Position numbers and translations under genes: made by a program
Shown here: positions 41,005-55,255 of the stretch, piece after piece
Layout of the letters: the number at the start of each line of letters is the position of its first letter
Numbering within the stretch: the stretch's first letter is position 1
IMG/VR virus record: IMGVR_UViG_3300042889_001272
Location: 124,001 to 188,000 of that record
Strand: one strand, 5' to 3'
Length of the DNA: 64,000 bases
Notes under the pieces: generated by a model
Databases searched by the model: none
What the model was told of the DNA's origin: nothing
What the model saw: the letters and a program-made list of their open reading frames with translations, nothing else

Positions 41005-41014
41005 GATTTTTCCT

Positions 41015-42190: not shown

Positions 42191-43041
42191 TTAACTCCGT
42201 ATAACATATAACGTTTGTAACTAGGAAGAACAGTTTCTCCTCTAAAATACAATGTAGTTACTGGATATTTTTTTAAAAACACACCAAAGTCTTGACAATA
42301 ATTTATGTGTTGGTAATCCGGACTGCTGTTAGATTGTAATAATACTGTGGTACCTGACTTTAACTTTTCGAACCAAGTATTATCCATGTGTTCTGCACTG
42401 GTGTTAATAACTAAGTCTGGATTAATTATACTGTCATTAAAGATGATATCGTTGTTTGCATCAAAACAATGTTCCATATTTTTATTACAGATAAATGCAT
42501 TTGGATTCATAATATTAATCAAAGGATTCATACTGGCATCTGGATCGATACTGTACAAATGTTTATAGTTTATATCTTTTAAAAACAAACTATGATGTGT
42601 TAACCAGCCGCCGATTAATAAAATATTATCAAATGATAAATTGTGTTTACTCAGCGTTTCTGCCATCCATAATTTACTGAGTATTTGACTTTTACTAAAA
42701 ATAGTTGCAAGTATACTGTCATTTAACAATGTTATTTTATGTAACTTCTGAAGTACAGAATCATCTGGCCATATTGAATTCATAATATAAATCAATTCTT
42801 TAGTAACCAATTTATCTTCGGCACAGATATTTGCATAAAAATTTAAACGATTACTTCTGTTTGAGTCAGGATATAGCTCATAGTCCGAAGAAATTAAATC
42901 TTTTAATGGCCATGGTTTAGAATTAGCTTCGGAATATTTCATATTGATGATATTCCTAATAAATTTCTTTTTTTCAGATTCATTGATAAAGTTAAAAAAC
43001 TTTTCAATGCCAAACAACCATGTTAAATTATCATTATCCAT
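42187..43041 (-). CDS. putative class I SAM-dependent methyltransferase-like protein
   Basis: SQILSKLW, LLIGGW, YSIDPD, INTSAEH, LQSN pattern. Confidence 0.5.
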   Translation of the reverse strand: MDNDNLTWLFGIEKFFNFINESEKKKFIRNIINMKYSEANSKPWPLKDLISSDYELYPDSNRSNRLNFYANICAEDKLVTKELIYIMNSIWPDDSVLQKLHKITLLNDSILATIFSKSQILSKLWMAETLSKHNLSFDNILLIGGWLTHHSLFLKDINYKHLYSIDPDASMNPLINIMNPNAFICNKNMEHCFDANNDIIFNDSIINPDLVINTSAEHMDNTWFEKLKSGTTVLLQSNSSPDYQHINYCQDFGVFLKKYPVTTLYFRGETVLPSYKRYMLYGVK

Positions 43042-43756
43042 TACAGCTAGTCCAGTCTATAAATTTATTTTTTAACCATTTAAAGTCATTGACCAGTGTA
43101 AAGTCGCAGTCTTTTGATTTAGCATAAGCAACACCTTGTCTGGCTCCGTGTACAGCGAAATAGCCGTGTTCTGTTTCAAGGCCAGCTTCGCACCACATTG
43201 TCAAACGTTCCTGGCTTTCTTGGTCATTGTTATTTTTATTAATGCCAGCACTTAGTTTAACTGCTTCACGGAATGCTGTTCGCCACGTAGCATACGGACT
43301 GTAATTAAATCTATGCTCTGTGGCAAGAACATTTACTTTAATATAACTATCTGCCAGTGTGGTAGTCATATCAGGCCGATCTAAACGTTCTGCACTAAAA
43401 CAATCTTTACTGAATAGTTTAATTCCACCATGCCCATAAATCAATCCGTTAATGGGATTCTTACTGCGAAATACTGCTACACTCTTTGGAGTTAGTTCTA
43501 TCTTCTTATCAAAGTTAAAACTATCAACTATCCACGAATCAGCATCCACTACATAAAATCTATCGATTTCGCACAAACTTGCAATATGTTTGTGACTTTC
43601 GAATATATTACCCACGGCTGCAACCGCAACTGCATGGTTAGTTTTAGTCTGTAAACGTTCCCAATTTTCGTTTAGATTTGCTTCATCTGTGTATAAAAAG
43701 TAAACGGGTGTCATATTAGTATTTAGGTAACTCAAATCCATACAACGGCAACGCAC
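43034..43756 (-). CDS. DxD glycosyltransferase-like protein, paralog family member
   Basis: VVDADS, NPINGLIYGHGGIKLF, WRTAFREAVKL. Confidence 0.6.
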   Translation of the reverse strand: MRCRCMDLSYLNTNMTPVYFLYTDEANLNENWERLQTKTNHAVAVAAVGNIFESHKHIASLCEIDRFYVVDADSWIVDSFNFDKKIELTPKSVAVFRSKNPINGLIYGHGGIKLFSKDCFSAERLDRPDMTTTLADSYIKVNVLATEHRFNYSPYATWRTAFREAVKLSAGINKNNNDQESQERLTMWCEAGLETEHGYFAVHGARQGVAYAKSKDCDFTLVNDFKWLKNKFIDWTSCNG

Positions 43757-44717
43757 TTTGATTTAACAACGATGGCCATCCCTGTCCTTTCGTTGGACTA
43801 AAATGAACGTGTTTAAACCAAATGCTTTGATTGGCATCTAATTCAACTAGCGGTAATCCTAGTTTATGTGTTAAGTCTAACATTAGTTTATGGCTATGAT
43901 CATTGATAAATTCTCCTTGTCCTAACTTCATAAGTTGCTCATCCCAAAATTTATCAAACCATGTATAGTCTGAAATTACACTATGATCAAAATTTTCAAC
44001 ATACAGCATATAAGCCCCTAGACGTGAGCCGTATATTACCCAGTCTCCATTTTCAACGTCGCGACCCACTGTCATCCATATTAACCAACGGGCAAAGTTC
44101 GCAGGGTACATCTTGTGTTTAAAATCTTCTGGTCTAACTTTAAAACCCTGATCCAGTCCCATTTTAACGCCTTCGCGAAAACCTGCTCTGAATGCTTGTT
44201 TGAAACTGGCATTGTTATGTACAATGCCATATGTATTGTTCATTTGTTTATATTGTTCAGGATCCCAACAAAAATCTACGTTATGAGTATTGTCGCCTTT
44301 TGTTGCGGCTTCATGGCTTTTCATATTATTGATATGTTCTGCATACCACAATTTAACGCCGCCATTGCCGTAGACTAAACCATTGACAATGTTCCTGCTA
44401 CTCCAGCTCAATGTTGCATGTTTGATGTCATTGGTAATTTCAATGCTTTTTTTCCATATTTCTGCATCTACTCTGCAATCTGCATCTACAGTAAAAAAGC
44501 GTTTGCTGCCTGCTTCTTCTGCGGCTTTTTTATGTGCGGCATCAAAGCCTTTTACGCCATGCACACGTTTTACCAATTTAGGATTAGGATGATTATCTTT
44601 TAAAAAATTAAAATTTTCATCAGCATTGGGTTCATCAAAACTAAGAAATATAACTGGTATATCTTTTAGTTTTAATATATTATTGTTTTTACTTTCTAAA
44701 GAATTTATTAAACTCAT
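43716..44717 (-). CDS. DxD glycosyltransferase-like protein, paralog family member
   Basis: FLSFDEPNAD, RVHGVKGFDAAH, TVDAD, NGLVYGNGGVKLW, RAGFREGVK. Confidence 0.6.
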   Translation of the reverse strand: MSLINSLESKNNNILKLKDIPVIFLSFDEPNADENFNFLKDNHPNPKLVKRVHGVKGFDAAHKKAAEEAGSKRFFTVDADCRVDAEIWKKSIEITNDIKHATLSWSSRNIVNGLVYGNGGVKLWYAEHINNMKSHEAATKGDNTHNVDFCWDPEQYKQMNNTYGIVHNNASFKQAFRAGFREGVKMGLDQGFKVRPEDFKHKMYPANFARWLIWMTVGRDVENGDWVIYGSRLGAYMLYVENFDHSVISDYTWFDKFWDEQLMKLGQGEFINDHSHKLMLDLTHKLGLPLVELDANQSIWFKHVHFSPTKGQGWPSLLNQSALPLYGFELPKY

Positions 44718-45432
44718 TTTTCATCCATTCGTAATCATTGATCATCTTTAAAGCTACATCATCGTCTTGATATTGTAGACCATATTTTTTACCCTGCTGA
44801 GCTCCTATTATAGATTGCTCGCCAAATCTTCTTCCTGCGCCCACTGTGATCCAAGTGTGCAGTCTATGTTCTGCTTCGTTGCGTAATCTAGTAATTGTTT
44901 CAACGTCCAGCTTATTTACTAATTCTTTATTGGTCAAGTTGGCTGACAGTTTTGCACATTCTCTATATGCGCTTCGAAATGTGCTGAACTCGTCGTAGTT
45001 AAATGCGGTGATATTACTAACTTCGTCAAATACTTTGGTACTTAATCCAAAACCCGTTGTGAAATCAATGACATCTTTATCTTCGCACAGTAACGGCTGC
45101 TTAGGTAATATTTTAACACCTCCATGACCATAAATCAAGTCATTTATTGGATTTATACTCGACCATACACATATATAATCACATTCTGGCTTATACCACC
45201 ATGTATTATATTTGCTGGGAGTAAAAGAGAAATTAAAGTCGTCGACAATAATTGCGTCACTGTCGACGACATAGAAATTATTAGTGAAACTTCTTCTAGC
45301 ACATTCTTGATGCGCTGGCGCAAATCCTTTTATACCGTTTACTCTGCGAGCATTAGGGACAAGCTCTTTGAGTCGGGCATAATTTTCATCTGCATATGGT
45401 TCGTTGTAACTGAGGAAAAAAACATCTAGCAT
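44689..45432 (-). CDS. DxD glycosyltransferase-like protein, paralog family member
   Basis: FLSYNEPYAD, RVNGIKG, VVDSD, YGHGGVK, FRSAYRECAKL. Confidence 0.6.
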   Translation of the reverse strand: MLDVFFLSYNEPYADENYARLKELVPNARRVNGIKGFAPAHQECARRSFTNNFYVVDSDAIIVDDFNFSFTPSKYNTWWYKPECDYICVWSSINPINDLIYGHGGVKILPKQPLLCEDKDVIDFTTGFGLSTKVFDEVSNITAFNYDEFSTFRSAYRECAKLSANLTNKELVNKLDVETITRLRNEAEHRLHTWITVGAGRRFGEQSIIGAQQGKKYGLQYQDDDVALKMINDYEWMKNEFNKFFRK

Positions 45433-45456: not shown

Positions 45457-46929
45457 TCACGTTACTACAGGCACATTGTACTTTAAATAGAAGTCTCGGG
45501 CATGTTCAATATTATTAACCATTGGCTGGCCTTTAATATTTAGACTAGTGTTTAGTAACATTGGACATCCGGTTAAACTATACCAATCTTCTAATAGCTT
45601 TCTAAATCCAGGACTGTCATTTTTACTCACAGTTTGCACACGGCTTGTTCCATCTTTATGTATAATAGCAGGGAACTCTTCTGGCTTGGTACATTTAGCA
45701 ACAAATTGCATGAACGGGCTGGCCGTTATGTTTGCAGGCATATCAAAGTATTCGTGTACATGTTCTTCTAAGATTGCTGGTGCGAATGGTCTGAACTGCT
45801 GTCTTCGCTTGATTGCGTTGACTGTGTCTTTGATTTCGGAACCTCTAGGATCCGCCAGTAGGCTTCGGTGCCCAAGAGCACGTGGTCCGAACTCAGCCTT
45901 GCCGCTAGCCACTCCCACAATTTTATCTCTTGTAAGTATACTAATAGTTTCATCAACTGGATATTCCTTTCCCATGTTTGTGCCAAGATATGCTCCTGGC
46001 CAGGTAACCTGCTCGCCAAAGAAGGCAGCAACTGCGCCAACACTACTGCCGGCATCGCCGGGGTTTGGCATGATCCATACCCGGTCCCAATCGCCTGTGA
46101 TTTCACTGTTGGCCACGCAATTAAGGGCACATCCGCCCATTAATACAATGTTCTTACTGGGCATATTTGCTCTAGCCCAACGACTAATACCCTGCAATAT
46201 TTCAGTGTAAACTTGCTGAGTAGCGGCAGCTAAGTCAAAAGTATCTTGTTCTTTTAATAAATCTAGTCGCCAATCTGGACAGCCGCGATGTAAGTTACGT
46301 TTAAACTTAACTTCGGGCCCATTAATTACACTAAAGAAATCTTCGTATACTGCGGCTTTGTATTTGTTGGCGTCGCCATAAGCAGCCATGCCCATGAGAA
46401 TATATTCTTCTTCGTTGGGCTTTAGTCCAATACGCTGTGTCATAGCACTGAACCATAATCCCAGACTATTTGGATATCCCTGTGCATATACTTTCTTTAA
46501 TTCATTGCCGGTGCCTTGCCAGACTGTCAGTGTTTCAAATTCGCCTATGCTGTCGATTACTACCACTGTGGCATCTGGCAATCCGCTGGTATAATAACCT
46601 GCGGCAGCATGGCTCTTATGATGTTCACCTATTACCAAAGGTTGGTTTAGGTTGTATTTTGCTAGATATGATCGTACATCGTTTTCCACTGTACGGTTGC
46701 CCTGGCCGGCTTGGAATTGACGGGCAGTTTTTAACACAGGATTTTCATACCAAACAATTAAATCTGGCTTGCCGTATTGTTCGGCATCTAAGATAATACC
46801 TGCACAGAGATCTCCGTCGTTTTTAATTCCAGAATATCTTTCACTGTGAGCTGCGAATTGTAATTGTTTATCATGCCAGACTGACACGGCAGCATCGTGA
46901 CTGTTGGCACTAATTCCCCAAATGTTCAT
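45457..46929 (-). CDS. carbamoyltransferase (NodU/CmcH/TobZ family)
   Basis: HDAAV, HHKSHAA, MGMAAYG, GGCALNCVAN, EFGPRALGHRS, RPFAP, RVQTV, LNTSLN. Confidence 0.95.
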   Translation of the reverse strand: MNIWGISANSHDAAVSVWHDKQLQFAAHSERYSGIKNDGDLCAGIILDAEQYGKPDLIVWYENPVLKTARQFQAGQGNRTVENDVRSYLAKYNLNQPLVIGEHHKSHAAAGYYTSGLPDATVVVIDSIGEFETLTVWQGTGNELKKVYAQGYPNSLGLWFSAMTQRIGLKPNEEEYILMGMAAYGDANKYKAAVYEDFFSVINGPEVKFKRNLHRGCPDWRLDLLKEQDTFDLAAATQQVYTEILQGISRWARANMPSKNIVLMGGCALNCVANSEITGDWDRVWIMPNPGDAGSSVGAVAAFFGEQVTWPGAYLGTNMGKEYPVDETISILTRDKIVGVASGKAEFGPRALGHRSLLADPRGSEIKDTVNAIKRRQQFRPFAPAILEEHVHEYFDMPANITASPFMQFVAKCTKPEEFPAIIHKDGTSRVQTVSKNDSPGFRKLLEDWYSLTGCPMLLNTSLNIKGQPMVNNIEHARDFYLKYNVPVVT

Positions 46930-48008
46930 CTGTATATAAAAGGATCTCGTTTGCGTAGTTCTTCTAAGCGTTTCTTTAATTTGACTTGAAACTGTACTTC
47001 CGGATGTTCGTGGTCAAATGTTTTATAAAGATCCAGCAATGATGTAATTGTTTTTTCTAGTTCGGAATTAAACTTGTTGGCATCTATGGCTGTGATAATA
47101 TCTCTGTATTCATCACTGTTAAAACAATAATGTCCACTGACACTCACTGCAATGTCCAAATCAGTAACACCGACTGGAACCCACCGTTGCCAATAATTTT
47201 TACTGTACACATAGTCTGCAAACTTAGACCATAGTTCCTTGGGTGCAAACTCTTTTAACAAGTCTGTTTGTACTTTGCCTAACTGCGGCGCAATATTTAA
47301 ACTATCAACATCGGCATCTATTCTTTTTTGTATATCATCGGCAGTAAAGTAGTCGGCATTATGTTCTTTGAATAAAAAGCCTGCGGCACGTATTTGTTCG
47401 CCGATTACTTGATTACGTGCAACATCAAATGTGCCGGCTTGCCCGTCTTTGGTTAGACTGCCTGTTTGTGTTACAAAGAATTTAACATTATTTTTATAAG
47501 GATTTAAAAATCCCAGTTGTATGTCGATTCTAGCTAGACTACTATCAACATCTATACCCGTGTTGTCCTCACTGCCAAATTCCAGCATAATATCAGGATT
47601 CAAACTTAATGCATATTCAATTAATTGCTTTGCATAATGTAATTGGTTATCTTTAATACGACTAACATCAATATGTATTAAATCAAATCTAGAGGCAATA
47701 TCAGCCGATATAGTTTTCATACAACGAATGATTGCATCTTCAATGGACAGTCCTCGATCTAAATCACTGAAGTAAGGCCCGCAATGATCTCTGCACAACA
47801 GCAAGTTTGGATTTTTATATTGTTTTACTTGTTCTGCTAATTCAGCAGTAGTACAAACATATCCTGTAACATAGTCAACTTGATTGCGGCTGGCAATAAT
47901 CATCAATGGATAATTATTATCTCTTGTATGTTTAGCAAGGATTGATATAATTTCCTTGCTCATTGGTCCGAAGCCCAATTTAAATTGTTTCATATTGTCT
48001 GCTTTCAA
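46926..48008 (-). CDS. GatZ/KbaZ-like (tagatose-bisphosphate aldolase/epimerase-like TIM-barrel) protein
   Basis: IIASRNQVD, RDHCGP, IHID, EHNAD, NIAPQLG. Confidence 0.6.
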   Translation of the reverse strand: MKADNMKQFKLGFGPMSKEIISILAKHTRDNNYPLMIIASRNQVDYVTGYVCTTAELAEQVKQYKNPNLLLCRDHCGPYFSDLDRGLSIEDAIIRCMKTISADIASRFDLIHIDVSRIKDNQLHYAKQLIEYALSLNPDIMLEFGSEDNTGIDVDSSLARIDIQLGFLNPYKNNVKFFVTQTGSLTKDGQAGTFDVARNQVIGEQIRAAGFLFKEHNADYFTADDIQKRIDADVDSLNIAPQLGKVQTDLLKEFAPKELWSKFADYVYSKNYWQRWVPVGVTDLDIAVSVSGHYCFNSDEYRDIITAIDANKFNSELEKTITSLLDLYKTFDHEHPEVQFQVKLKKRLEELRKRDPFIYR

Positions 48009-48720
48009 TTTCGTTGTAGAGTTCTTCGCTGGGTTTTATCCCAGTGTAAATCTCAAATTGTTTTAAGAATTGACTGCGATAAAACTCACGCCCAGATACA
48101 TATTTAATATTATAATTCTGACATTGTTGTTTAAACTCGTTGTTCTTAATGGCCAAGTCGATTACCAACCTTGTGTCGGGGGGTATTTGTCCCAACATAT
48201 ATGGACTTTCATCAGTGCTTGTTCCCAATGCTGTACAGTTAATTATGATGTTTGCAGTCTTATACCGTTCATTCCATGTACTTAGATTCCTGGCACAAAC
48301 ATTTAAGTTTCCGTAATGTTCTTCTTCTAGATATTTAACGAACATACTGCCTATGGCTCCTGCACCCAAAATAGTTATTTTATCTGTTTTATTGATATGC
48401 TTGCAAACATGTTCAACGCCTGCTAGATCGGCATTGTATCCATGAGTCTGTCCTTTGTTTATCTTAATAGTATTACAACTATTGTAAAGTTGTACATAGG
48501 GATGTTTTTTATTCAAATATGATATAATGGACTGCTTAAAAGGCATACTAACACTGATTCCAGCGACGTCGTCTTCAATGGCCTGCGTTATTGCTTTTTC
48601 AATATCAGTACAGGCCAATGGTTCATATGTTGCATCTATATTATAGTGTTTAAAGAATTCTGTGTAAAAATATTGCCCAGTCTTTCCTGGAAATTTACTT
48701 AGACTTATAAATTTTTTCAT
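47980..48720 (-). CDS. shikimate dehydrogenase-like oxidoreductase
   Basis: SVSMPFK, CNTI, GYNAD, LGAGAIG, INCT, QF.IYTG. Confidence 0.85.
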   Translation of the reverse strand: MKKFISLSKFPGKTGQYFYTEFFKHYNIDATYEPLACTDIEKAITQAIEDDVAGISVSMPFKQSIISYLNKKHPYVQLYNSCNTIKINKGQTHGYNADLAGVEHVCKHINKTDKITILGAGAIGSMFVKYLEEEHYGNLNVCARNLSTWNERYKTANIIINCTALGTSTDESPYMLGQIPPDTRLVIDLAIKNNEFKQQCQNYNIKYVSGREFYRSQFLKQFEIYTGIKPSEELYNEIESRQYETI

Positions 48721-49055
48721 CGTTTGTACGCTCTTATTTCTCTTATTTTATTATCTTGATCAAAGTCTATAACATCTATTACTGGAATTGCAACTTTATT
48801 ATCTAATATAACTTTGATCTCTGCTATAACAGTATTATGGCCCATGGCAATTTTATCAATTTCTATTCGAATATTCCCCAACTGTGAAAACAATGTTTGA
48901 TTAAATGCCAATACATTTTCTCTGCCGATCATTTGTCCGTCCCAGTCTGTTAATATTACATTTTCAGCAAACATTGTTTCCAAGCTGGTCAAATCCTTTT
49001 CACTGAATGCTTTTAAGTAAAGCATGGCAATCTGACTCTGTGTGGCTTTACCCAC
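48717..49055 (-). CDS. SnoaL/NTF2-like protein
   Basis: YLKAFSEKD...FAENVIL.DW...G.E.V...DVIDF...KI.EIRAY. Confidence 0.8.
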   Translation of the reverse strand: MGKATQSQIAMLYLKAFSEKDLTSLETMFAENVILTDWDGQMIGRENVLAFNQTLFSQLGNIRIEIDKIAMGHNTVIAEIKVILDNKVAIPVIDVIDFDQDNKIREIRAYKR

Positions 49056-50601
49056 GATCTAACTCCGCAAATAGTTTAATACCCAAGTACCATAGGAATA
49101 TATCAAATGGAGCAGTGTGCAATGGGCTCATGTTCCAAAAGATTATCGGTATTAATTGTTGTACTTTATTATAATCTAAATTGTTATCTACGATGTATTT
49201 CTTCAACCGCTGTTGATATACGGTGATATGATCGACATTCGGAATACTCAATGTTACACTGCTGTCTTCGATTTCTATGTTAAAATTATGATTCTTAATG
49301 TTGGCATAGTTGATGATCAACCCCCCGGCCATTTTAGCCAAGTCGTAGTATATATCACCGTACTCGACTAGGCCTGCGAACTCATGTCGCCAGTCAATGA
49401 TCTTAAACTCTCCGCTGTCACTGATGACAATGTTATCAAACTGTAAATCACCGTGCAGGAATCCCGGGCGGGTAACTTGTGCAAAATATTCCCAGTCTAT
49501 CTTATTTAAATAATAACTATGGTCTCGGACTTCTATGCCGTCGATGTTGGTCACTGGTTTTAAACCAGGATACTTTTCTAAAAACTTGTTGATACGTGAC
49601 AGTGATTTTGTTTTATAGAACTCAATGCTGGCATCATGTATATCAGCATCTATGTCTCGCCACACATTTTTTTCCAGCCAATTAAGCAATTCATTGAATG
49701 CCACTGGATTGTTGAACTCGTATAATGTCTTGCCTGGAAAGAAATCATAGGCCATATAATTGCCGCTGTGCGTACAGTTGGCGGGGAAGACATGTGGATT
49801 AGCCAATACTTTGTCATACTTCTTTTTGGCAACTGTGTTATCTAGCCACCATTTAACTACACGATTGTTACAAATATATGTTACTTCGTCTTTTTTTGTA
49901 AAGTCGAATTTTTGGCTTTTACTTAATTCGGTTTGATATATTGTTGGACTGCCAAAGTCTAACCATGTATTAAGATTCGCAGTATCACTGCCTAGTTTAA
50001 TAATACCAATAAACTCATTACTGTGACTTTGTTCCAAGTCTGCAAAAAATGTTGTATAGTCATTTATATACATCAGCCCTGTAAATGCCGACCAAGTTGC
50101 AGGAGTAGTTTCTTTAAACTTGATCTCTTGTATATGAAAACTATTGTTTTTGTTAAACATTGTATAAAGATGCGTGTCTTGTTCAGGCACTGACTTAACA
50201 AAATAACAATCCTTGTTTCTAACTAAATCTACCACTGTTTGGTCAAAGTAAGTGTCACAGGGTACATACCAAAAAGGTGCATCTATTACCTCTTTACATT
50301 GTAGCAATGTGTATCCGGTTCCTGATTTAGCACTGGTCCAGTCGTTGATGTGTAAAAATTCTATATTTCTGTCACTATATGCTACATTACAAAAATCTAT
50401 AATTTGTTCTTTTAGATGTCCAACAGGTATAATAAACTTCGTATCCTTGGGAAAGTTATCTATGATATGTCCTAAAACTGGTTTATCTTTGTAAGGCAAT
50501 AATGCCTTATTAAGATTCTTAGTATAATTGCCCATTCTACTGCCAAGCCCGGCTGTAGGAATAACAACAGTATTACTCATGTTCGTAGCTGATTCTACCA
50601 T
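49048..50601 (-). CDS. nucleotidyltransferase fused to an APH/choline-kinase-like phosphotransferase
   Basis: N: IPTAGLGSRMG..K.LLP, PCD, WLDFG; C: HGDLQFDN, IIDWR, YDLAK. Confidence 0.85.
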   Translation of the reverse strand: MVESATNMSNTVVIPTAGLGSRMGNYTKNLNKALLPYKDKPVLGHIIDNFPKDTKFIIPVGHLKEQIIDFCNVAYSDRNIEFLHINDWTSAKSGTGYTLLQCKEVIDAPFWYVPCDTYFDQTVVDLVRNKDCYFVKSVPEQDTHLYTMFNKNNSFHIQEIKFKETTPATWSAFTGLMYINDYTTFFADLEQSHSNEFIGIIKLGSDTANLNTWLDFGSPTIYQTELSKSQKFDFTKKDEVTYICNNRVVKWWLDNTVAKKKYDKVLANPHVFPANCTHSGNYMAYDFFPGKTLYEFNNPVAFNELLNWLEKNVWRDIDADIHDASIEFYKTKSLSRINKFLEKYPGLKPVTNIDGIEVRDHSYYLNKIDWEYFAQVTRPGFLHGDLQFDNIVISDSGEFKIIDWRHEFAGLVEYGDIYYDLAKMAGGLIINYANIKNHNFNIEIEDSSVTLSIPNVDHITVYQQRLKKYIVDNNLDYNKVQQLIPIIFWNMSPLHTAPFDIFLWYLGIKLFAELDRG

Positions 50602-51022
50602 GTGTTCTACCTGCGTCGTCTTGTAATCGAATTACATCATCTAATTCTGTTGTGCTGGTTTCCATGAATTCTAAATCAGTGTCAGCGATTACTCTGTGTA
50701 CATAGCCTGGTTGTACATTGAATACAACACCGGCTTTAAGTTCTATACGTTCGAATGTATATTCGTAGGCTTCTACTTGCCTAGACGTCATGCCTTGTTC
50801 TAAAAACTTGGCAATGTCCAGTGGTTCTCGACTGCGATGTAACATGCCTGTGCCGCTGAGAACGTAGTTAGTTTCTATCTTATATTCGTGTACTTGTAAG
50901 CTGGTTCTATTGCCCGCTTTGAATAAAATACGTTTACTGGCATACGGAGTTTGGCTTCCATCTGCAATCCAAAGCTCGTAGCCCCAGTGTTTAGTTACTT
51001 TTTTAATTTTCATCATGCCCAT
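50573..51022 (-). CDS. cupin (mannose-6-phosphate isomerase-like)
   Basis: KHWGYE, SLQVHEYK.ET, PGYVHR, EtST.ELDDVIRLQDD.GR. Confidence 0.85.
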   Translation of the reverse strand: MGMMKIKKVTKHWGYELWIADGSQTPYASKRILFKAGNRTSLQVHEYKIETNYVLSGTGMLHRSREPLDIAKFLEQGMTSRQVEAYEYTFERIELKAGVVFNVQPGYVHRVIADTDLEFMETSTTELDDVIRLQDDAGRTHGRISYEHE

Positions 51023-51810
51023 CCATTTTCTTTTAACTTTGTTAATACTATGTTATATGCTTCATTATGCCCGTCGGGTCCAGTATGCCACGTTTTAATT
51101 TCATCTGGATATTTGACACTTAATTCTCCCCAGGACAATCTAACTAAATTTTCTTCATCCATGTACTTAGCATATTCTTCTGGCTCTTGTGTCAGCATCA
51201 AATGTTTAATATTATGTTTCTTTAACAGTTGATGTGCCATGGTCATTACCCCAATACTTTGTAATCGATTTATCCTAGGGTCGTGTATAGTTGTGGCAAA
51301 GTCGTACAGTGTTTTCATTCTTTCTTTTGGTTCATTTTGAAATCTAGCATAATAGCCAGAATACTTGTCATCTTTTCTAAATGTTTCCCAAAAGTCAATT
51401 ACACCCATGTAATTTTCAGTGAACATTCCGCCCTTGTACAAAGGATCATCTTGCATGGGATGCTTGTCTAAAACTTGATGATATGTTTCTGCTCTATAAG
51501 GAGGATATTGATGATAATTAACATCGACATTTGTTATTTCATGTCCGAATTTGTAGTCCATGGGAAACCAATCAACCCTGTCATAACTAGTATGACTCAC
51601 TAATACAATGTCATCTTCTGATGCAATATTTTTTACTGCATATTCTGCCTGCAAGTAAATGCTTAGATTCGTACTAGATCCTTTGGCAAGATTAAACAAC
51701 TCTCTTTCAAGGTTGTTTGCCAATAATACTCCATATGGTTCTGTATGCAAATCTATGCACCCAATACCAATATTAAAACTATCACCACATATTATTAATT
51801 TTTTAGACAT
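51013..51810 (-). CDS. SGNH/GDSL-like protein (likely start 51810)
   Basis: ICGDSFN, NLAKGSSTN, C-terminal HTGPDGH. Confidence 0.6.
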   Translation of the reverse strand: MSKKLIICGDSFNIGIGCIDLHTEPYGVLLANNLERELFNLAKGSSTNLSIYLQAEYAVKNIASEDDIVLVSHTSYDRVDWFPMDYKFGHEITNVDVNYHQYPPYRAETYHQVLDKHPMQDDPLYKGGMFTENYMGVIDFWETFRKDDKYSGYYARFQNEPKERMKTLYDFATTIHDPRINRLQSIGVMTMAHQLLKKHNIKHLMLTQEPEEYAKYMDEENLVRLSWGELSVKYPDEIKTWHTGPDGHNEAYNIVLTKLKENGWA

Positions 51811-52600
51811 CTTTATATTTCTCTTCCCACCATTCATTTTGTTTATTTCTCAAATCCTGAAAACTATGTTCATGTTTTATCATACCATTTTCAAACATAT
51901 CATTTATATTATCTCTTAATATCACACAATCCATGTATCTGTGAAGTAAGTTATCTATAGTCTTGCCGCGCTCTATTAAATATCTTGCAAATAAACTATG
52001 AATATCATATTTGTTCGAAATAGTTTCGTTGTAATAGTATACATAATAATCAAAAAACTCAGACAGTATTTTAAACATTTCCCAATCTACCATTAGACAC
52101 GTATCATTAGTGGAAAAATAATCGCTGTTTGGATCAGTGCTTAATCCGCCGATGCTGTGCATGTGGTCAGGAATAGGTAGCTGATTATTAAAATTTTTAA
52201 TAGGCTGTAGATAACGAATATATAAATCTGGGCGCCATAATAATATCTTATTGTACTGTCTTACATGTTGCATTGACAACAAAACTTGATAAGCATATTT
52301 CCATTTAAATGCCATGCCGATTGTAGGGTGATATGCAAATTCAGGATTTTGTTTTAATTGTTGTTCCGTAAACATCATTTTATTATCTACTAATAAGTTT
52401 ATTGATGAAAAGTTTACACTACTTCTATTAATAGTATTTGCTATAATATCAGTAGTACACTCTGTATGCATATCAGTTGACTGCGGATTATAAATTTTAT
52501 TTTCAGTGATTAAATAATAATCAGCATCAATTATCCAACTGCTGGACGCTTCGACTAGATGTCGCATCACTCCAGAAATTATAATCGCAGTGTTAGACAT
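51803..52600 (-). CDS. hypothetical protein, SGxxR family (glycan-related, uncharacterised)
   Basis: AIIISGVMR, RPDL, ND..; resembles 53509 and 54407. Confidence 0.6.
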   Translation of the reverse strand: MSNTAIIISGVMRHLVEASSSWIIDADYYLITENKIYNPQSTDMHTECTTDIIANTINRSSVNFSSINLLVDNKMMFTEQQLKQNPEFAYHPTIGMAFKWKYAYQVLLSMQHVRQYNKILLWRPDLYIRYLQPIKNFNNQLPIPDHMHSIGGLSTDPNSDYFSTNDTCLMVDWEMFKILSEFFDYYVYYYNETISNKYDIHSLFARYLIERGKTIDNLLHRYMDCVILRDNINDMFENGMIKHEHSFQDLRNKQNEWWEEKYKDV

Positions 52601-53549
52601 ATAACTTATGTTGCTTAATATATCTTACTAATTCATTAGCCCATGCTTCATGACCTTCCGGGCTAGGATGCCAGCCAGTCAAAGGAGGATTGACATTATT
52701 AACAGGATCTTCTATGTAACTCTTAAAAGTATTATTGGAGTGATCTTTTTTATAAAATCTAACAGGATCTATACTATCCCATAGTGCAGTATAATCATTG
52801 ACGTGCAGTTCGCGAAGCATTGGATTTTTAGATTGTTGATATTTATGACCACCAATACTGCCTTTTAACTTTTTAACTTCGTCACTGACTTTTAAATCCT
52901 GCCAATCATTAGGATTGGCATTGGGCGTTTGATAGAAAGCATTAAAGCACATCCATTTAATATTATTAACTCTGCAAAAGTTCTGCAACTGCAAAACATT
53001 TAATACATATCTAGGAATATATTCTTCGGCATGCCATAGATATGCAACATATAATTCCCAGAATTTTTCCTGGGCAACTGCATCAAAGTGCGGGACCTGC
53101 GGCCACAATCTAAATAGATGCGATAACCCATCGTCTTTATACCAAAAGCTATTGCGTTCAGGACTTGTCCAGCCAATTATAACAAACAACTTATCAGTTG
53201 GAATATTATTTGCTATATATTTTTGAGAAATATAGTTAATAGTTCTACGTAGAATAGTACCGTTGTCATCGGCTGGCCAACTGAGATTAGTCACTGGAAC
53301 TTTTAAAAGTTTTGCCAAATGTGTGGGGAAAATTTTAGGCGTTCTATAAGCATCATTTTCTTCTACAAAATCATAATGCCCCGGGTGTGTATCATCTGGA
53401 TATCTTTTTGCAATATTAGGATCGACGATTTCACAGCCAAATGTCCAGCTGTCACCGTCACATATAATTTCTGGTTCTATGTTGACATCGATGATGTCAA
53501 CCATTCGTTTAGATGTACCACTCAAACCATTTCCTCCTAATTTCTTCAT
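52593..53549 (-). CDS. SGNH/GDSL-like protein
   Basis: CDGDSWT, NLSWPADDN, IGWTSPER, HPSPEGHEAWA. Confidence 0.65.
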   Translation of the reverse strand: MKKLGGNGLSGTSKRMVDIIDVNIEPEIICDGDSWTFGCEIVDPNIAKRYPDDTHPGHYDFVEENDAYRTPKIFPTHLAKLLKVPVTNLSWPADDNGTILRRTINYISQKYIANNIPTDKLFVIIGWTSPERNSFWYKDDGLSHLFRLWPQVPHFDAVAQEKFWELYVAYLWHAEEYIPRYVLNVLQLQNFCRVNNIKWMCFNAFYQTPNANPNDWQDLKVSDEVKKLKGSIGGHKYQQSKNPMLRELHVNDYTALWDSIDPVRFYKKDHSNNTFKSYIEDPVNNVNPPLTGWHPSPEGHEAWANELVRYIKQHKLYV

Positions 53550-54426
53550 AGTTATAAATTGAATTCAATTTTGCTTCCACTGCGGTGCTTCGCATCACTG
53601 CATATTCAAATGGATTTACGCAGTTTGGGTGTATGGATAATTCTGTCATGTAATTATATAATAAACAACCGGGTCCTAGCCATAATACTTTATCCAAGTT
53701 TAAACCACATTGATTCTTAAATTGATATTCCATGGGGCGGGAGATTTTATGAAAAGAATATAGATCTCCCATTAAATCCATGGTAGGACTATCACCATAA
53801 AATAACACATCATCAAAATTATTAGAATTAAATTCTGAGGCAAATTTGCTTACGGGTGTAGCTGTATAACAAACGCCTGGCCAAACTCGTTGTAAAGGAA
53901 ATCGATGACTAGGGTTGTAAATGACATCCAATCTTGCCTTAATAACTAAGTCATATTGAAAACTTTGTTTCAATTCATAGTCTCTTTTAAGCATTAAACT
54001 TCTTGCAAAGCTATAGAACATTGGATCCCAGGCACGTTTGAATTTTTCTTTATCAAATTCTTGTTGTATAAAACCCTTTGGCTTATATGTTTCTATAATG
54101 GCATCTCGATCATTGTGAATCACATCAGTATAAACAGTGATATCTGTTTTGGGCAAGCGCCATGTATTGGTATCCCATGTATGAATAAAGTAATCAGTTT
54201 CTACATCCAAGCCATTTTCTGGGTGCGGATATTCGTGTTCAAAGAAACGTTTAATGTTGGCAACACTTTCCTGCCAATAACGTGCTTGACCACTGAAGCA
54301 AACTGCAATTCTAAATTTTCTTTTAGGTTCCGCTGATAGCGGCTCTGGTATTTCAACCTGAATAGGCGCACTACGCAAATTGCCAGTAAGTGAGTCTATT
54401 TCAACATTAAATAAGCTCATGTCCAC
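53509..54426 (-). CDS. hypothetical protein, SGxxR family
   Basis: IAVCFSGQAR, FIHTW, YDLVIKARLD, DD.LFYG. Confidence 0.65.
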   Translation of the reverse strand: MDMSLFNVEIDSLTGNLRSAPIQVEIPEPLSAEPKRKFRIAVCFSGQARYWQESVANIKRFFEHEYPHPENGLDVETDYFIHTWDTNTWRLPKTDITVYTDVIHNDRDAIIETYKPKGFIQQEFDKEKFKRAWDPMFYSFARSLMLKRDYELKQSFQYDLVIKARLDVIYNPSHRFPLQRVWPGVCYTATPVSKFASEFNSNNFDDVLFYGDSPTMDLMGDLYSFHKISRPMEYQFKNQCGLNLDKVLWLGPGCLLYNYMTELSIHPNCVNPFEYAVMRSTAVEAKLNSIYNYEEIRRKWFEWYI

Positions 54427-55255
54427 CTAATTCTCCTTCTAATCCTGATTTTATTTTTCTATCTAAGTAGTCCTGACTCCTGAATATTTTAGGATCAACT
54501 GACAATGGGGATATTTCTATGTTTAACATCTTTGCATAAAAATACAATGCGTGTTCTGGGCCCACTAGATTATTACTGTTAAAACTTTTCTTTCCTATAA
54601 TCGGCAACCATCTATAAAATTCACAGATGCGGTTAAATGTAACAGTGTCAGCAAACCAAAATACGTCGCCCAATCTATGAAAAGGAAATTGTTCAGGATC
54701 TTTTCTAGTATGACAAGTATAAAAAGTATTAACTTCTGGATACACTAGATCATATCTTACAAAATGATCAATTTGATAATCATCAAAAAACATGTCGTAT
54801 CTTATCTTGATGCATAAATCATAATGAAAATCATTTTCGAACTCGTGAATTTTCTTTAAGTGAGCGGCTCTCATCACGCTATAGAATTGGCCGGCGGCCC
54901 AATCTAATTTAGTTTCACCGTGCTCATTGAGATGTACAGCATTTTGTTCGCGCACATCTTTGATTTTATTTTTGTTAGAAAATTCATCTTCAAATACACA
55001 CGCTTTGGGTTTTATTATATCTACAAATCTCTTCTTTTCATCATCAGATATTTTGTCTCCGGGCACGGTATTATAATCCCAGCCTTCGTGCATTAACAAA
55101 CGATGGGGCGGCGAATTATAATCCCATACATGACAAAATATGTCTATGTCATCGACTTCGTATGATTGTTTGATTTTATCAATTAGTTTAAACCACGTAT
55201 GATAACATTTTTCCCATGTTCGGGGTTGTCCGCTGATACAAATAGCCACTTTCAT
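54407..55255 (-). CDS. hypothetical protein, SGxxR family
   Basis: VAICISGQPR, FCHVW, YDLCIKIRYD, GD.FWF, GPE. Confidence 0.65.
   Translation of the reverse strand: MKVAICISGQPRTWEKCYHTWFKLIDKIKQSYEVDDIDIFCHVWDYNSPPHRLLMHEGWDYNTVPGDKISDDEKKRFVDIIKPKACVFEDEFSNKNKIKDVREQNAVHLNEHGETKLDWAAGQFYSVMRAAHLKKIHEFENDFHYDLCIKIRYDMFFDDYQIDHFVRYDLVYPEVNTFYTCHTRKDPEQFPFHRLGDVFWFADTVTFNRICEFYRWLPIIGKKSFNSNNLVGPEHALYFYAKMLNIEISPLSVDPKIFRSQDYLDRKIKSGLEGELGGHELI

What the first reader, a model, noticed from the sequence alone, without database searches (positions are those of the whole stretch)
46926..51022. Five-gene unusual sugar/cyclitol-nucleotide module
Seen in order: cupin isomerase, nucleotidyltransferase-kinase fusion, SnoaL/NTF2 protein, shikimate-dehydrogenase-like reductase, GatZ/KbaZ-like TIM barrel. 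There are no other shikimate pathway genes, so the AroE-like enzyme is probably repurposed. Inference: isomerise or condense, cyclise or dehydrate, reduce, phosphorylate and activate as an NDP donor, producing a non-standard monosaccharide, cyclitol or phospho-substituent for the adjacent GTs.
Basis: partly seen in the sequence, partly recalled or inferred. Interest (0 to 1): 0.62.

Follow-up and report, generated by a model that had tools for sequence, protein, structure and literature searches.

The report
Phage sugar-nucleotide module beside hidden glycosyltransferases
A large aquatic T4-like phage carries, next to its baseplate and fibre genes, a conserved five-gene cassette that most likely turns a common sugar phosphate into a rare nucleotide-activated sugar for a set of hidden glycosyltransferases; the same uncharacterised cassette is widespread in bacterial surface-polysaccharide loci.

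Summary
The window comes from a 235.5-kb T4-like phage record.

The same gene order recurs in 36 viral contigs. The set also occurs in at least 7 bacterial loci, some next to Wzx or Wzm/Wzt export genes.

- In cells the nucleotidyltransferase-kinase fusion is almost always paired with a KdsC-like phosphatase, which this phage lacks.
- It is fed by one of two front ends: a GatZ-like barrel plus a mannose-6-phosphate-isomerase-like cupin, or a ribulose-phosphate-epimerase-like barrel plus a SIS isomerase.
- The "SnoaL" protein keeps the ketosteroid-isomerase catalytic triad and is optional.

Best reading (about 0.55): ketose phosphate, epimerised, isomerised to an aldose phosphate, phosphorylated at C1, dephosphorylated at the far end, then nucleotidylated. 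This is the logic of the GDP-heptose and GDP-valienol routes. An SdhL-type reductase tailors the product, which is later carbamoylated.

The "adjacent GTs" exist: two Pfam-blind families fold as GT-A. The sugar's identity and the reductase's step are unknown. This is an uncharacterised variant of a known kind. Interest 0.6.

The parts
50573..51022 (-). Cupin, type II mannose-6-phosphate-isomerase-like; putative ketose-phosphate to aldose-phosphate isomerase
   Evidence: Pfam Cupin_2 and MannoseP_isomer, both just under their cut-offs. The homologue in marine virus L001 scores 103 bits on MannoseP_isomer. Q43, H45, E50 and H109 are invariant in 18 phage and bacterial sequences. It is fused to the NT-kinase in L042 and L047.
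49927..50574 (-). Nucleotidyltransferase domain of the fusion protein (residues about 10-225)
   Evidence: NTP_transf_3. Weak NCBIfam matches to AglF, archaeal GlmU and HddC. Best PDB match for the profile is LicC, 1jyk, E 4.6e-7. The signature loop is invariant.
49048..49926 (-). APH/choline-kinase-like small-molecule kinase domain of the fusion (residues about 226-517, plus stop codon)
   Evidence: Pfam APH, 25-27 bits, over its cut-off. The catalytic-loop and Mg-binding motifs are invariant.
48717..49055 (-). NTF2/SnoaL-fold protein with the ketosteroid-isomerase catalytic triad; an optional member of the module
   Evidence: SnoaL_2, E 3.6e-13. Best PDB match for the profile is P. putida ketosteroid isomerase, E 7e-8. 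Invariant Y13, D37 and D94 align with KSI Y16, D40 and D103. Missing in 6 related viral loci.
47980..48720 (-). SdhL-type shikimate-dehydrogenase-family oxidoreductase
   Evidence: Shikimate_dh_N. Best PDB match for the profile is HI0607 SdhL, 1npy, E 1.2e-32. K62, D98, N83 and the Rossmann glycines are invariant. It always lies directly downstream of the fusion in clade I.
46926..48008 (-). GatZ/KbaZ-like class-II-aldolase-fold TIM barrel; putative ketose-phosphate 4-epimerase or aldolase
   Evidence: Pfam 27.0 bits against a cut-off of 26.7. PDB 3txv and 2fiq, E about 1e-7. Invariant D74-H75, H112/D114 and H216. Paired with the cupin in phages, bacteria and archaea.
45457..46929 (-). NodU/CmcH-type O-carbamoyltransferase; a frequent sixth member
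   Evidence: Carbam_trans_C E 2.6e-53 and Carbam_trans_N E 8e-33. Syntenic in most viral loci and found in L001, L042, L064 and L082.
43034..45432 (-). Three paralogous GT-A glycosyltransferases (family U1: 44689-45432, 43716-44717, 43034-43756)
   Evidence: No Pfam match. They are paralogues. Invariant D-x-D. AlphaFold model with pLDDT 81. Foldseek top match is the PBCV-1 capsid GT A64R. VIA Z 10.9 to GT-A enzymes.
56654..57640 (-). Fourth U1-family GT-A glycosyltransferase
   Evidence: 45% identical to 43716-44717; same alignment A4.
53509..55255 (-). Two paralogous GT-A glycosyltransferases (family U2: 54407-55255, 53509-54426)
   Evidence: phrog_13607. Model with pLDDT 90. Foldseek matches B3GalT5, BoGT6a, GTA/GTB and glycogenin; 125 hits at E<=1e-3. 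A homologue lies two genes upstream of the cupin in L001.
51803..52600 (-). Probable third U2-family member
   Evidence: hhalign probability 88-93% to the two U2 genes.
51013..51837 (-). SGNH/GDSL-like hydrolase or acyltransferase directly upstream of the cupin
   Evidence: Invariant G-D-S block and C-terminal D...H block in 15 sequences. Syntenic in most loci.
55252..56652 (-). N-terminal-twitch radical SAM protein linked to the module
   Evidence: NCBIfam NF033640, 338 bits against a cut-off of 170. Homologues scoring 553-585 bits lie 8 kb from the module in bacterial loci L042 and L049.

Best explanation
The five genes form a phage copy of a widespread, uncharacterised pathway that makes a rare nucleotide-activated aldose without a phosphomutase.

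**Proposed steps (inferred)**
1. The GatZ-like barrel epimerises a common ketose phosphate such as fructose-6-phosphate or sedoheptulose-7-phosphate, or builds one by aldol chemistry.
2. The mannose-6-phosphate-isomerase-like cupin converts that ketose phosphate into the matching aldose phosphate.
3. The kinase half of the fusion phosphorylates C1.
4. A KdsC-like HAD phosphatase removes the distal phosphate. This enzyme is encoded next to the fusion in cells and in a few phages. Here it is presumably borrowed from the host.
5. The nucleotidyltransferase half makes the NDP-sugar.
6. The SdhL-type NADP(H) oxidoreductase, helped where present by the ketosteroid-isomerase-like protein, tailors a ring keto or hydroxyl group of the sugar or NDP-sugar.
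7. The neighbouring carbamoyltransferase and SGNH enzyme decorate the sugar, and the flanking soluble GT-A enzymes transfer it.

The acceptor is most plausibly a virion fibre or baseplate protein encoded just upstream.

**Shown here:** the folds, the conserved catalytic residues, the synteny and the co-occurrence.

**Inferred:** every substrate, the order of the steps, the nucleotide used and the acceptor.
For: **Conservation of the module**
- Same gene order in 36 viral contigs.
- All or most of the set occurs together in bacterial loci L041, L042, L044, L047, L048, L049 and L081. These sit in polysaccharide loci with DegT, SDR, GT2/GT4 and Wzm-Wzt genes.

**Physical links between members**
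- Cupin, nucleotidyltransferase and kinase are fused into one protein of 765-767 aa in L042 and L047.
- Genomes whose fusion locus lacks the GatZ-like and cupin genes carry them as an adjacent pair elsewhere.

**Kinase, phosphatase, nucleotidyltransferase back end**
- The KdsC/YrbI-like HAD (TIGR01670, E 1e-19) is found in about 48 of 57 cellular loci, mostly directly behind the fusion. It also occurs in viral loci L019, L020 and L033.

**A second, analogous front end**
- About 30 loci have a SIS isomerase plus a ribulose-phosphate-3-epimerase-like gene directly upstream of the same fusion and HAD.
- So a ketose-phosphate epimerase plus an aldose-ketose isomerase recurs in two unrelated forms.

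**Known precedents for the logic**
- GDP-heptose: GmhA, HddA, GmhB, HddC (own knowledge).
- GDP-valienol: AcbU, AcbJ, AcbR (PMC9200736).

**Intact catalytic residues**
- Cupin metal ligands, kinase and nucleotidyltransferase motifs, and the Lys/Asp dyad of the SDH-like enzyme are all conserved.

**Transferases and context**
- Seven flanking GT-A enzymes.
- In a complete 1.9-Mb alphaproteobacterial chromosome the operon reads fusion, SDH-like, GT2, HAD.
- None of the 46 proteins in the phage gene train has a membrane-span-like segment.
- Baseplate wedge, a 2991-aa virion protein and a fibre-like protein lie directly upstream.
Against: - No enzyme activity has been measured for any member of these families.
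- Most family matches are weak or under the curated cut-offs.
- The phage record has no KdsC-like phosphatase, so one step must come from the host, or from the unsequenced third of the genome, or the route differs.
- The model gives the SDH-like enzyme no compelling step.
- The best structural relative of the nucleotidyltransferase domain is LicC, which acts on a phospho-alcohol and not on a sugar-1-phosphate.
- APH-family kinases phosphorylate many non-anomeric hydroxyls (own knowledge).
- The GatZ-like match covers mainly residues 17-113, and some members of that family are non-catalytic (own knowledge).
- Some MAG contigs may be mis-binned phages. L098, L099, L100, L101 and L105 do carry housekeeping or export genes.
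Confidence: 0.55

Rival explanations
1. The module makes a CDP-activated polyol or alcohol phosphate, that is a phospho-substituent donor. It would work like LicA/LicC (CDP-choline), TarI/TarJ (CDP-ribitol) or Gtp1-3 (CDP-2-glycerol). The front-end enzymes make a ketose phosphate, the phosphatase frees it, the SDH-like enzyme reduces the ketone, the kinase phosphorylates an alcohol, and the LicC-like domain adds CMP.
For: - LicC is the best PDB match for the nucleotidyltransferase profile.
- Public annotations call relatives 'CTP:phosphocholine cytidylyltransferase-like / choline kinase'.
- The reductase always sits directly behind the fusion, as TarJ sits beside TarI (the TarIJ and Gtp pathways are from own knowledge).
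- This model gives the SDH-like enzyme a clear role.
Against: - A kinase plus a phosphatase plus an aldose-ketose isomerase is wasteful for a polyol route.
- About 30 loci have the fusion and HAD with SIS and epimerase genes and no reductase at all.
- No LicD- or TagF-type phosphotransferase was seen; the flanking transferases are GT-A with D-x-D.
- NCBIfam's best matches are sugar-1-phosphate nucleotidyltransferases such as AglF and archaeal GlmU.
Confidence: 0.2
2. The module makes a nucleotide-activated carbocyclic sugar (a cyclitol or unsaturated carbasugar). The ketosteroid-isomerase-like enzyme shifts an enone, the SDH-like enzyme reduces it, and kinase, phosphatase and nucleotidyltransferase then act as in GDP-valienol synthesis.
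For: - Nearly all characterised SDH-family enzymes act on six-membered carbocycles (own knowledge).
- The ketosteroid-isomerase triad is intact.
- The kinase, phosphatase, nucleotidyltransferase order is proven for valienol (PMC9200736).
Against: - No DHQS/EEVS-type cyclase in the phage record, and none was seen in the five bacterial contexts read.
- The core cassette exists without the SDH-like and KSI-like genes.
- The cupin and the GatZ-like barrel point to open-chain sugar-phosphate chemistry.
- An SDH-family enzyme that reduces a keto-sugar is known: 5-ketofructose reductase, 7cok, listed.
Confidence: 0.1
3. The NDP-sugar is used to glycosylate phage DNA (base hypermodification) and not proteins or polysaccharide.
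For: - Phages are known to glycosylate DNA (own knowledge).
- Enterococcus phage 9183 has a nucleotidyltransferase-like protein with a small 'phosphoheptose isomerase' among its thymidylate-metabolism genes.
- All proteins of the gene train are soluble.
Against: - The module sits behind baseplate and fibre genes, not with replication or nucleotide genes.
- Seven GTs, a carbamoyltransferase and SGNH enzymes imply an oligosaccharide.
- The bacterial homologues lie in loci with export machinery.
- The phage 9183 protein matches only residues 8-78 of the fusion.
Confidence: 0.05
4. The genes are unrelated auxiliary metabolic genes, and the AroE-like enzyme is a plain shikimate dehydrogenase that boosts host aromatic synthesis.
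For: Catalytic Lys and Asp are conserved. SdhL has weak activity on shikimate (own knowledge).
Against: - Scores lie far below every AroE equivalog cut-off.
- Synteny and co-occurrence with the sugar genes are strict across phages and bacteria.
- No DHQ synthase is present in the record.
Confidence: 0.03

Closest known systems
GDP-D-glycero-alpha-D-manno-heptose pathway (GmhA, HddA, GmhB, HddC)
   Same: The logic is the same: ketose phosphate to aldose phosphate by an isomerase, then a C1 kinase, then a distal HAD phosphatase, then a nucleotidyltransferase, all inside surface-glycan loci. The sister cassette even uses a small SIS isomerase like GmhA.
   Different: - The isomerase is a cupin, not SIS.
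- The kinase is APH-fold, not GHMP, and is fused to the nucleotidyltransferase.
- The phosphatase is KdsC-like, not GmhB-like, and is missing from this phage.
- There is an extra epimerase or aldolase barrel, an SdhL-type reductase and a KSI-like protein.
- No sequence homology was shown for any step except the general nucleotidyltransferase fold.
GDP-valienol branch of acarbose biosynthesis (AcbU, AcbJ, AcbR)
   Same: A 1-kinase makes a 1,7-bisphosphate, a HAD phosphatase removes the distal phosphate, and nucleotidylation follows (PMC9200736).
   Different: The substrate there is a carbocycle made by a DHQS-like cyclase, which is absent here. The enzymes are separate and are not shown to be homologous.
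Bifunctional type II PMI-GMP (ManC/AlgA) with phosphomannomutase
   Same: A mannose-6-phosphate-isomerase-type cupin is combined with a nucleotidyltransferase, here even as cupin-NT-kinase triple fusions.
   Different: The domain order is reversed. A kinase plus a phosphatase would stand in for the mutase. The window's cupin scores below the Pfam cut-off.
LicC/LicA (CTP:phosphocholine cytidylyltransferase and choline kinase) and their fusions
   Same: The domain pair and order match: LicC-like nucleotidyltransferase followed by an APH/choline-kinase fold. LicC is the best PDB match.
   Different: - The partners here are sugar-phosphate enzymes and a phosphatase.
- No LicD-type transferase was found.
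- Similarity is low (E 4.6e-7 for the profile).
SdhL / HI0607 shikimate-dehydrogenase-like protein of Haemophilus influenzae
   Same: It is the best relative of the AroE-like protein (E 1.2e-32, near full length), with the same catalytic Lys and Asp.
   Different: The physiological substrate of SdhL is itself unknown (own knowledge). The phage protein is shorter (246 against 271 aa), and it scores under the NF009202 cut-off (97 against 306 bits).
GatZ/KbaZ family, including D-tagatose-6-phosphate 4-epimerase
   Same: The fold family matches, with conserved Asp-His and His residues at class-II-aldolase-like positions.
   Different: The match is very distant, aligning mainly over the first third. 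The protein is about 60-90 residues shorter. Its activity is unknown.
Host recognition cluster of T4-like pelagimyophages and cyanomyophages; virus-encoded capsid glycosylation in PBCV-1
   Same: A hypervariable region beside the large virion protein and fibre genes holds GTs, LPS-type sugar genes and radical SAM cassettes (PMC7029224). The top fold match of the U1 GT is the PBCV-1 capsid GT A64R.
   Different: That paper does not describe this module or its enzymes, and it proposes modification of the host O-chain. Here all 46 proteins are soluble, and the acceptor has not been tested.

Membership tests
Shikimate dehydrogenase proper (AroE) | Shikimate_dh_N substrate domain plus a Rossmann domain with the catalytic Lys/Asp dyad | tested here: met
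   PF08501, E 1.4e-11. K62, D98 and N83 are invariant in 17 sequences.
Shikimate dehydrogenase proper (AroE) | Score over the curated equivalog cut-off | tested here: not met
   TIGR00507: 92 bits against 200. NF009202: 97 against 306. All 17 shikimate dehydrogenase models are below their cut-offs.
Shikimate dehydrogenase proper (AroE) | Genomic association with other shikimate-pathway genes | tested here: not met
   No DHQ synthase in the 235.5-kb record. The neighbours in phages and bacteria are sugar-nucleotide and GT genes. Other pathway genes were not searched for.
SdhL (HI0607-like) subfamily | Closest full-length similarity to HI0607 rather than to AroE or YdiB | tested here: met
   1npy E 1.2e-32 over profile positions 5-232. 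The next best, Aquifex AroE, has E 3e-24.
GatZ/KbaZ-like (PF08013) | Match over Pfam's gathering score, across the barrel | tested here: inconclusive
   27.0 bits against 26.7, covering residues 20-121 only. The PDB profile match to 3txv and 2fiq has E about 1e-7 with a weak second segment. The structure was not predicted.
Type II mannose-6-phosphate isomerase cupin (PF01050) | Pfam match over the cut-off | tested here: not met
   21.3 bits against 23.6 for the window's protein. The homologue in L001 scores 103 bits.
Type II mannose-6-phosphate isomerase cupin (PF01050) | Conserved Gln/His/Glu/His metal-ligand pattern in the two cupin motifs | tested here: met
   Q43, H45, E50 and H109 are invariant in 18 sequences. 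Their assignment as metal ligands rests on my own knowledge of the family.
LicC/LicA-type CDP-alcohol pathway | LicC-like nucleotidyltransferase plus a choline-kinase-fold kinase with intact motifs | tested here: met
LicC/LicA-type CDP-alcohol pathway | A LicD- or TagF-type phosphotransferase that uses the CDP-alcohol | tested here: inconclusive
   No such Pfam hit in the flanking genes. Several neighbours remain unassigned: 52593-53549, 42187-43041 and 57600-60293.
Heptose-type NDP-sugar route (isomerase, 1-kinase, distal phosphatase, nucleotidyltransferase) | All four activities encoded together | tested here: not met
   For this phage, the phosphatase is absent from the record. The feature is met in about 48 of 57 cellular loci and in viral loci L019, L020 and L033.
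Heptose-type NDP-sugar route (isomerase, 1-kinase, distal phosphatase, nucleotidyltransferase) | The kinase phosphorylates the anomeric hydroxyl of a sugar phosphate | not testable with these tools
   This needs an enzyme assay.
Ketosteroid isomerase-like enzymes (NTF2 fold) | Tyr/Asp/Asp catalytic triad at the KSI positions | tested here: met
   Y13, D37 and D94 are invariant and align to Y16, D40 and D103 of P. putida KSI.
GT-A glycosyltransferases | GT-A Rossmann-like fold with a D-x-D (or equivalent) motif | tested here: met
   U1: Z 10.9, Foldseek 1e-3 to A64R, invariant D78-x-D80. U2: Foldseek 7e-6, with 125 hits at E<=1e-3. U2 has an invariant R-x-D in place of D-x-D.
NodU/CmcH/TobZ carbamoyltransferases | Carbam_trans_N and Carbam_trans_C domains over their cut-offs | tested here: met
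   114.7 and 180.5 bits.

The most novel reading that the evidence does not exclude
In the phage and proteobacterial branch, the ketosteroid-isomerase-like and SdhL-type enzymes work on an enone or keto intermediate. The cassette would then deliver a nucleotide-activated unsaturated or carbocyclic sugar mimic, a chemistry not known in glycan donors. A fully soluble phage machinery would attach it, carbamoylated and further altered by the 14 or more N-twitch radical SAM enzymes downstream, to the virion's own fibre or baseplate proteins.
Probability: 0.1. Interest if true: 0.85.

Novelty: new variant of a known kind. Interest (0 to 1): 0.6.

Why it matters
- **A widespread pathway with no known product.** The fusion protein alone has more than 1,100 relatives at 90% clustering, mostly in uncultured aquatic phages. 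Related cassettes sit in the surface-glycan loci of Pseudomonadota, Bdellovibrionota, Bacteroidota, many Patescibacteria and DPANN archaea. If the model holds, it defines a mutase-independent route to rare NDP-sugars.

- **A first physiological context for SdhL.** The SdhL branch of the shikimate dehydrogenase family has long been an orphan. This work places it in a specific glycan-synthesis setting.

- **Hidden phage glycosyltransferases.** Large phages carry many GT-A enzymes that family databases do not see.

- **A testable link to host recognition.** The module is joined to baseplate and fibre genes in a wholly soluble gene train. That makes virion glycosylation, or modification of the host surface, directly testable as a factor in phage host recognition.

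Tried and rejected
**Searches that found nothing useful**
- DNA search of the module against the phage collection: no match.
- Pfam, NCBIfam and PHROGs on the flanking genes: nearly blank, so two families were folded instead.
- Profile search of the PDB with the U1 family: only chance hits to retinoic-acid-binding proteins. Rejected.
- The kinase domain alone against the PDB: nothing.
- The word-based protein search on the fusion returned only close phage relatives in its top 120, with no bacterial context. The genome-contig scan with an alignment that included the distant marine homologue was what reached cells.
- The Atlas name 'WeoK' for a bacterial cluster could not be traced in the literature.
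- Literature searches for this gene combination found nothing specific.

No read, habitat or expression data were obtained, and read laying was not used.
- Two encoding-contig look-ups found no record.

**Ideas considered and dropped**
- RiPP-type peptide maturation as the purpose of the radical SAM battery: not tested.
- A plain AroE role.
- A cyclase role for the SnoaL-like protein. It is optional and has the KSI triad.
- My first mapping of the N-terminal Ser-x-Ser of the AroE-like protein onto AroE's carboxylate-binding serines. That stretch aligns only with HI0607.

Full report
**What the window is.** The window is bases 124001-188000 of a single 235,561-bp record with 38% G+C and 20 tRNA genes. 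The record encodes a T4-type major capsid protein (Gp23, E 2.6e-81) and is classed as a virus record about 66% complete. Its CobS-like ATPase is closest to those of jumbo myoviruses such as PA5oct. The window also holds SAM synthetase, a 5'-3' exonuclease, a PhyH dioxygenase and ThyX. From about 64000 down to 20871, a single minus-strand gene train of 46 ORFs runs without interruption.

**The observation.** The five ORFs fill 46926-51022 exactly, overlap by a few bases and lie on the minus strand. Domain searches agree with each label, though mostly weakly:
- cupin: Cupin_2 and MannoseP_isomer, both just under their cut-offs;
- fusion: NTP_transf_3 plus APH;
- SnoaL_2: E 3.6e-13;
- Shikimate_dh_N: E 1.4e-11;
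- GatZ_KbaZ-like: 27.0 bits against a cut-off of 26.7.

Alignments of relatives show intact catalytic motifs:
- in the fusion, the nucleotidyltransferase signature loop and the kinase catalytic-loop and metal-binding motifs are invariant;
- in the AroE-like protein, K62, D98, N83 and the dinucleotide-binding glycines are invariant;
- in the GatZ-like protein, an Asp-His pair and further His/Asp/Glu residues are invariant;
- in the cupin, Q43, H45, E50 and H109 are invariant.

**Conservation in viruses.** A scan of viral contigs with the fusion protein gave 36 loci at 62-91% identity. tblastn and blastp show the order cupin, fusion, SnoaL-like, AroE-like, GatZ-like, carbamoyltransferase in nearly all of them.
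- The SnoaL-like gene is missing from L019, L020, L029, L031, L033 and L036.
- L007, L008 and L024 carry an extra SGNH-like gene between the fusion and the SnoaL-like gene.
- A distant marine virus (MH319741, locus L001) has a strong mannose-6-phosphate-isomerase cupin, the fusion (29% identity) and the GatZ-like gene in a row. They sit in a sugar-nucleotide locus with SDR enzymes, a GHMP kinase, another nucleotidyltransferase and a carbamoyltransferase, but with no AroE-like or SnoaL-like gene.
- The fusion family is large: 1,130 clusters at E<=1e-5, the best 120 all metagenomic, on contigs of up to 351 kb. In the Atlas it is mostly viral.

**The neighbours are hidden glycosyltransferases.** Pfam and PHROGs say almost nothing about the flanking genes. 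All-against-all comparison shows two paralog families.
- *U1* comprises 56654-57640, 44689-45432, 43716-44717 and 43034-43756. It has an invariant D-x-D. Its model (pLDDT 81) matches GT-A enzymes. The Foldseek top hit is the PBCV-1 capsid glycosyltransferase A64R at E 1e-3. VIA-align gives Z 10.9, rmsd 3.1 Å over 141 residues, to a Leptospira GT, followed by B4GALNT1 and SpsA.
- *U2* comprises 54407-55255 and 53509-54426, and probably 51803-52600. Its model (pLDDT 90) matches B3GalT5, BoGT6a, the blood-group transferases and glycogenin, with 125 hits at E<=1e-3. A U2 homologue sits two genes upstream of the cupin in L001.

The gene directly upstream of the cupin (51013-51837) has SGNH/GDSL blocks.

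**Cellular relatives.** A genome-contig scan used an alignment that included the marine homologue. It found 57 loci encoding the fusion, most of them full-length, at 24-38% identity. They come from Alpha- and Gammaproteobacteria, Bdellovibrionota, Bacteroidota, many Patescibacteria and DPANN archaea. HMMs built from the phage families gave the following:
- cupin, fusion, AroE-like and GatZ-like genes occur together in L041, L042, L044, L047, L048, L049 and L081;
- the SnoaL-like gene is added in L041 and L048, and a carbamoyltransferase in L042 and L064;
- the core of cupin, fusion and GatZ-like occurs without the AroE-like gene in eight further loci;
- in L042 and L047 the cupin is fused to the nucleotidyltransferase-kinase in one protein of 765-767 aa.

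Gene tables with precomputed Pfam hits show real cellular contexts:
- *L098*, a complete 1.9-Mb alphaproteobacterial chromosome: fusion, SDH-like, GT2, HAD, beside MetK and MnmA.
- *L099*, Bdellovibrionota: HAD, GatZ-like, cupin, fusion, SDH-like, among DegT and SDR genes.
- *L100*: the same set followed by GT4 and GT2.
- *L101*, Gammaproteobacteria: Wzm, Wzt, one unknown gene, cupin, fusion, SDH-like, HAD, GatZ-like, a nucleotidyltransferase, an IMPase-like gene, then GTs.
- *L102*, Patescibacteria: the core beside a Wzx-type flippase.

The genomes behind L045 and L043 have only the fusion and the SDH-like gene at that locus. Both encode an adjacent GatZ-like plus cupin pair elsewhere. In L045's genome that pair lies among housekeeping genes.

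**The missing partner and the second front end.** The small HAD protein is KdsC/YrbI-like (TIGR01670, E 1e-19, under the cut-off). It is 52-69% identical across distant loci. tblastn finds it in about 48 of the 57 cellular loci, mostly directly behind the fusion, and in viral loci L019, L020 and L033. It is not found in the window's phage record.

In a Chitinophagia capsule locus the order is Wza, Wzz, SIS isomerase, ribulose-phosphate-3-epimerase-like, fusion, HAD, KSI-like, one unknown gene, Wzx. The SIS and epimerase genes lie directly upstream of the fusion in about 30 loci.

So one back end (kinase, phosphatase, nucleotidyltransferase) is served by two unrelated front ends. Each consists of a barrel enzyme of a ketose-phosphate epimerase or aldolase family plus an aldose-ketose isomerase.

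A quick maximum-likelihood tree of the fusion splits it into two clades, each with SH-aLRT support of 95. The tree is a quick one and its root is arbitrary.
- One clade holds the 13 freshwater phage rows together with the bacterial loci that have the SDH-like gene.
- The other holds the Patescibacteria, Bacteroidota and DPANN loci together with the marine virus.

**Mechanism.** This pattern is the logic of the GDP-heptose pathway (GmhA, HddA, GmhB, HddC; own knowledge). It is also the logic of GDP-valienol formation, where a 1-kinase makes valienol 1,7-diphosphate, a phosphatase removes the 7-phosphate, and nucleotidylation follows (PMC9200736).

I therefore propose this sequence: ketose phosphate, epimerised or assembled by the GatZ-like barrel, isomerised by the cupin, phosphorylated at C1, dephosphorylated at the distal position, then nucleotidylated. 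If the substrate is fructose-6-phosphate and the barrel is a 4-epimerase, as some GatZ-family members are (own knowledge), the sugar would have talo or galacto configuration. This is a guess.

The SDH-like enzyme is of the SdhL type: HI0607 scores E 1.2e-32, and the protein lies far under every AroE cut-off. Its step is not explained. It may reduce or oxidise a ring position of the sugar or the NDP-sugar.

The SnoaL-like protein matches ketosteroid isomerases best (E 7e-8). Its invariant Y13, D37 and D94 align with the KSI triad. That suggests enolisation next to a ketone. Because the gene is optional, it may speed up a step that can also happen on its own.

The carbamoyltransferase and the SGNH enzyme would decorate the sugar or the glycan.

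**Acceptor.** Directly upstream on the same strand lie three structural genes:
- a baseplate wedge protein (phrog_10646, E 3e-268);
- a 2991-aa virion structural protein (phrog_10938, E 2e-183);
- a protein with a tail-fibre-like C-terminus.

This matches the "host recognition cluster" described for T4-like pelagimyophages and cyanomyophages. That cluster holds fibres, GTs, LPS-type genes and radical SAM cassettes, and has been proposed to modify the host O-chain (PMC7029224).

None of the 46 proteins has a membrane-span-like hydrophobic stretch. The bacterial loci, by contrast, carry Wzx or Wzm/Wzt. I therefore lean towards glycosylation of virion proteins in the cytoplasm. Action on host lipid-linked intermediates is not excluded.

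**Limits.**
- No activity is known for any member of these families.
- Many matches are weak.
- The record is incomplete.
- The read tools did not complete.
- Some MAG contigs could be mis-binned phages, although the contexts cited above contain cellular genes.

**Verdict.** The module is an uncharacterised variant of a known kind of pathway (NDP-sugar synthesis for glycan assembly). It is unusual for its SdhL-type and KSI-like members and for its setting in a phage.

Noticed in passing
window 21422-42190 and 55252-56652 (minus strand): At least 14 radical SAM genes lie in one gene train, one of them a double-domain 850-aa protein at 30554-33106. Most have a SPASM/twitch-like domain at the N-terminus. 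55252-56652 scores 338 bits on NCBIfam NF033640, 'N-terminal twitch radical SAM'. Their substrate is unknown. A close homologue lies 8 kb from the sugar module in bacterial loci L042 and L049.
   Followed up: partly
L041-L097, e.g. L105:6747-10101: A four-gene cassette (small SIS isomerase, ribulose-phosphate-3-epimerase-like, NT-kinase fusion, KdsC-like HAD) is conserved in about 30 loci of Patescibacteria, Bacteroidota and others. It may make an NDP-pentose or NDP-hexose such as an arabinose- or allose-type sugar. It appears to be uncharacterised.
   Followed up: partly
L042:9311-11605 and L047:9245-11548 (= L100:10001-12304): A triple fusion of the mannose-6-phosphate-isomerase-like cupin, the nucleotidyltransferase and the kinase in one protein of 765-767 aa.
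   Followed up: partly
window 20871-64000, all 46 minus-strand ORFs: No ORF has a 19-residue stretch with Kyte-Doolittle mean >= 1.6. The whole glycan and radical SAM gene train is predicted to be soluble, unlike the bacterial loci that carry Wzx or Wzm/Wzt.
   Followed up: yes
L007:11412-12257, L008:9058-9894, L024 (same position): An extra gene of about 280 aa, with SGNH-like blocks, is inserted between the fusion and the SnoaL-like gene in some phage relatives. This is cassette-like gain and loss inside the module.
   Followed up: partly
L005:14127-16496, L018:5570-8140, L025:15142-17685, L033:15314-19471: In several relatives the U1 GT-A domain that follows the carbamoyltransferase is part of a much larger protein (524-1385 aa). 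This suggests multi-domain glycosyltransferases.
   Followed up: no
window 3064-4164 (+): A phage-encoded S-adenosylmethionine synthetase with all three domains and strong scores. It plausibly supplies the many radical SAM enzymes.
   Followed up: no
window 26096-26836, 40252-41154, 10665-11414: Aspartyl/asparaginyl beta-hydroxylase-like, nitroreductase-family and PhyH dioxygenase genes lie among or near the radical SAM genes. Such enzymes also occur in peptide-maturation clusters, so protein or peptide modification is an open alternative for that part of the gene train.
   Followed up: no
L101:14481-15443 and L100:7094-8038: An inositol-monophosphatase/FBPase-family phosphatase sits next to the module in two unrelated bacterial loci. 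This would fit a ketose-bisphosphate intermediate if the GatZ-like protein is a true aldolase.
   Followed up: no
L106 (Enterococcus phage 9183, NC_055907.1 29756-31731): A 544-aa 'NDP-sugar pyrophosphorylase-like' protein follows a 114-aa 'phosphoheptose isomerase' among thymidylate-metabolism genes. This may be a DNA-glycosylation cassette. It matches only residues 8-78 of the fusion.
   Followed up: no
genome G000:C1:345-35483: 20 tRNA genes lie in two clusters near the start of the phage record.
   Followed up: no
window 52593-53549, 42187-43041, 57600-60293, 37093-38936: Conserved genes with no assignable fold family. 52593-53549 matches only DUF6071. They remain candidates for the missing phosphatase or for further transferases.
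   Followed up: no
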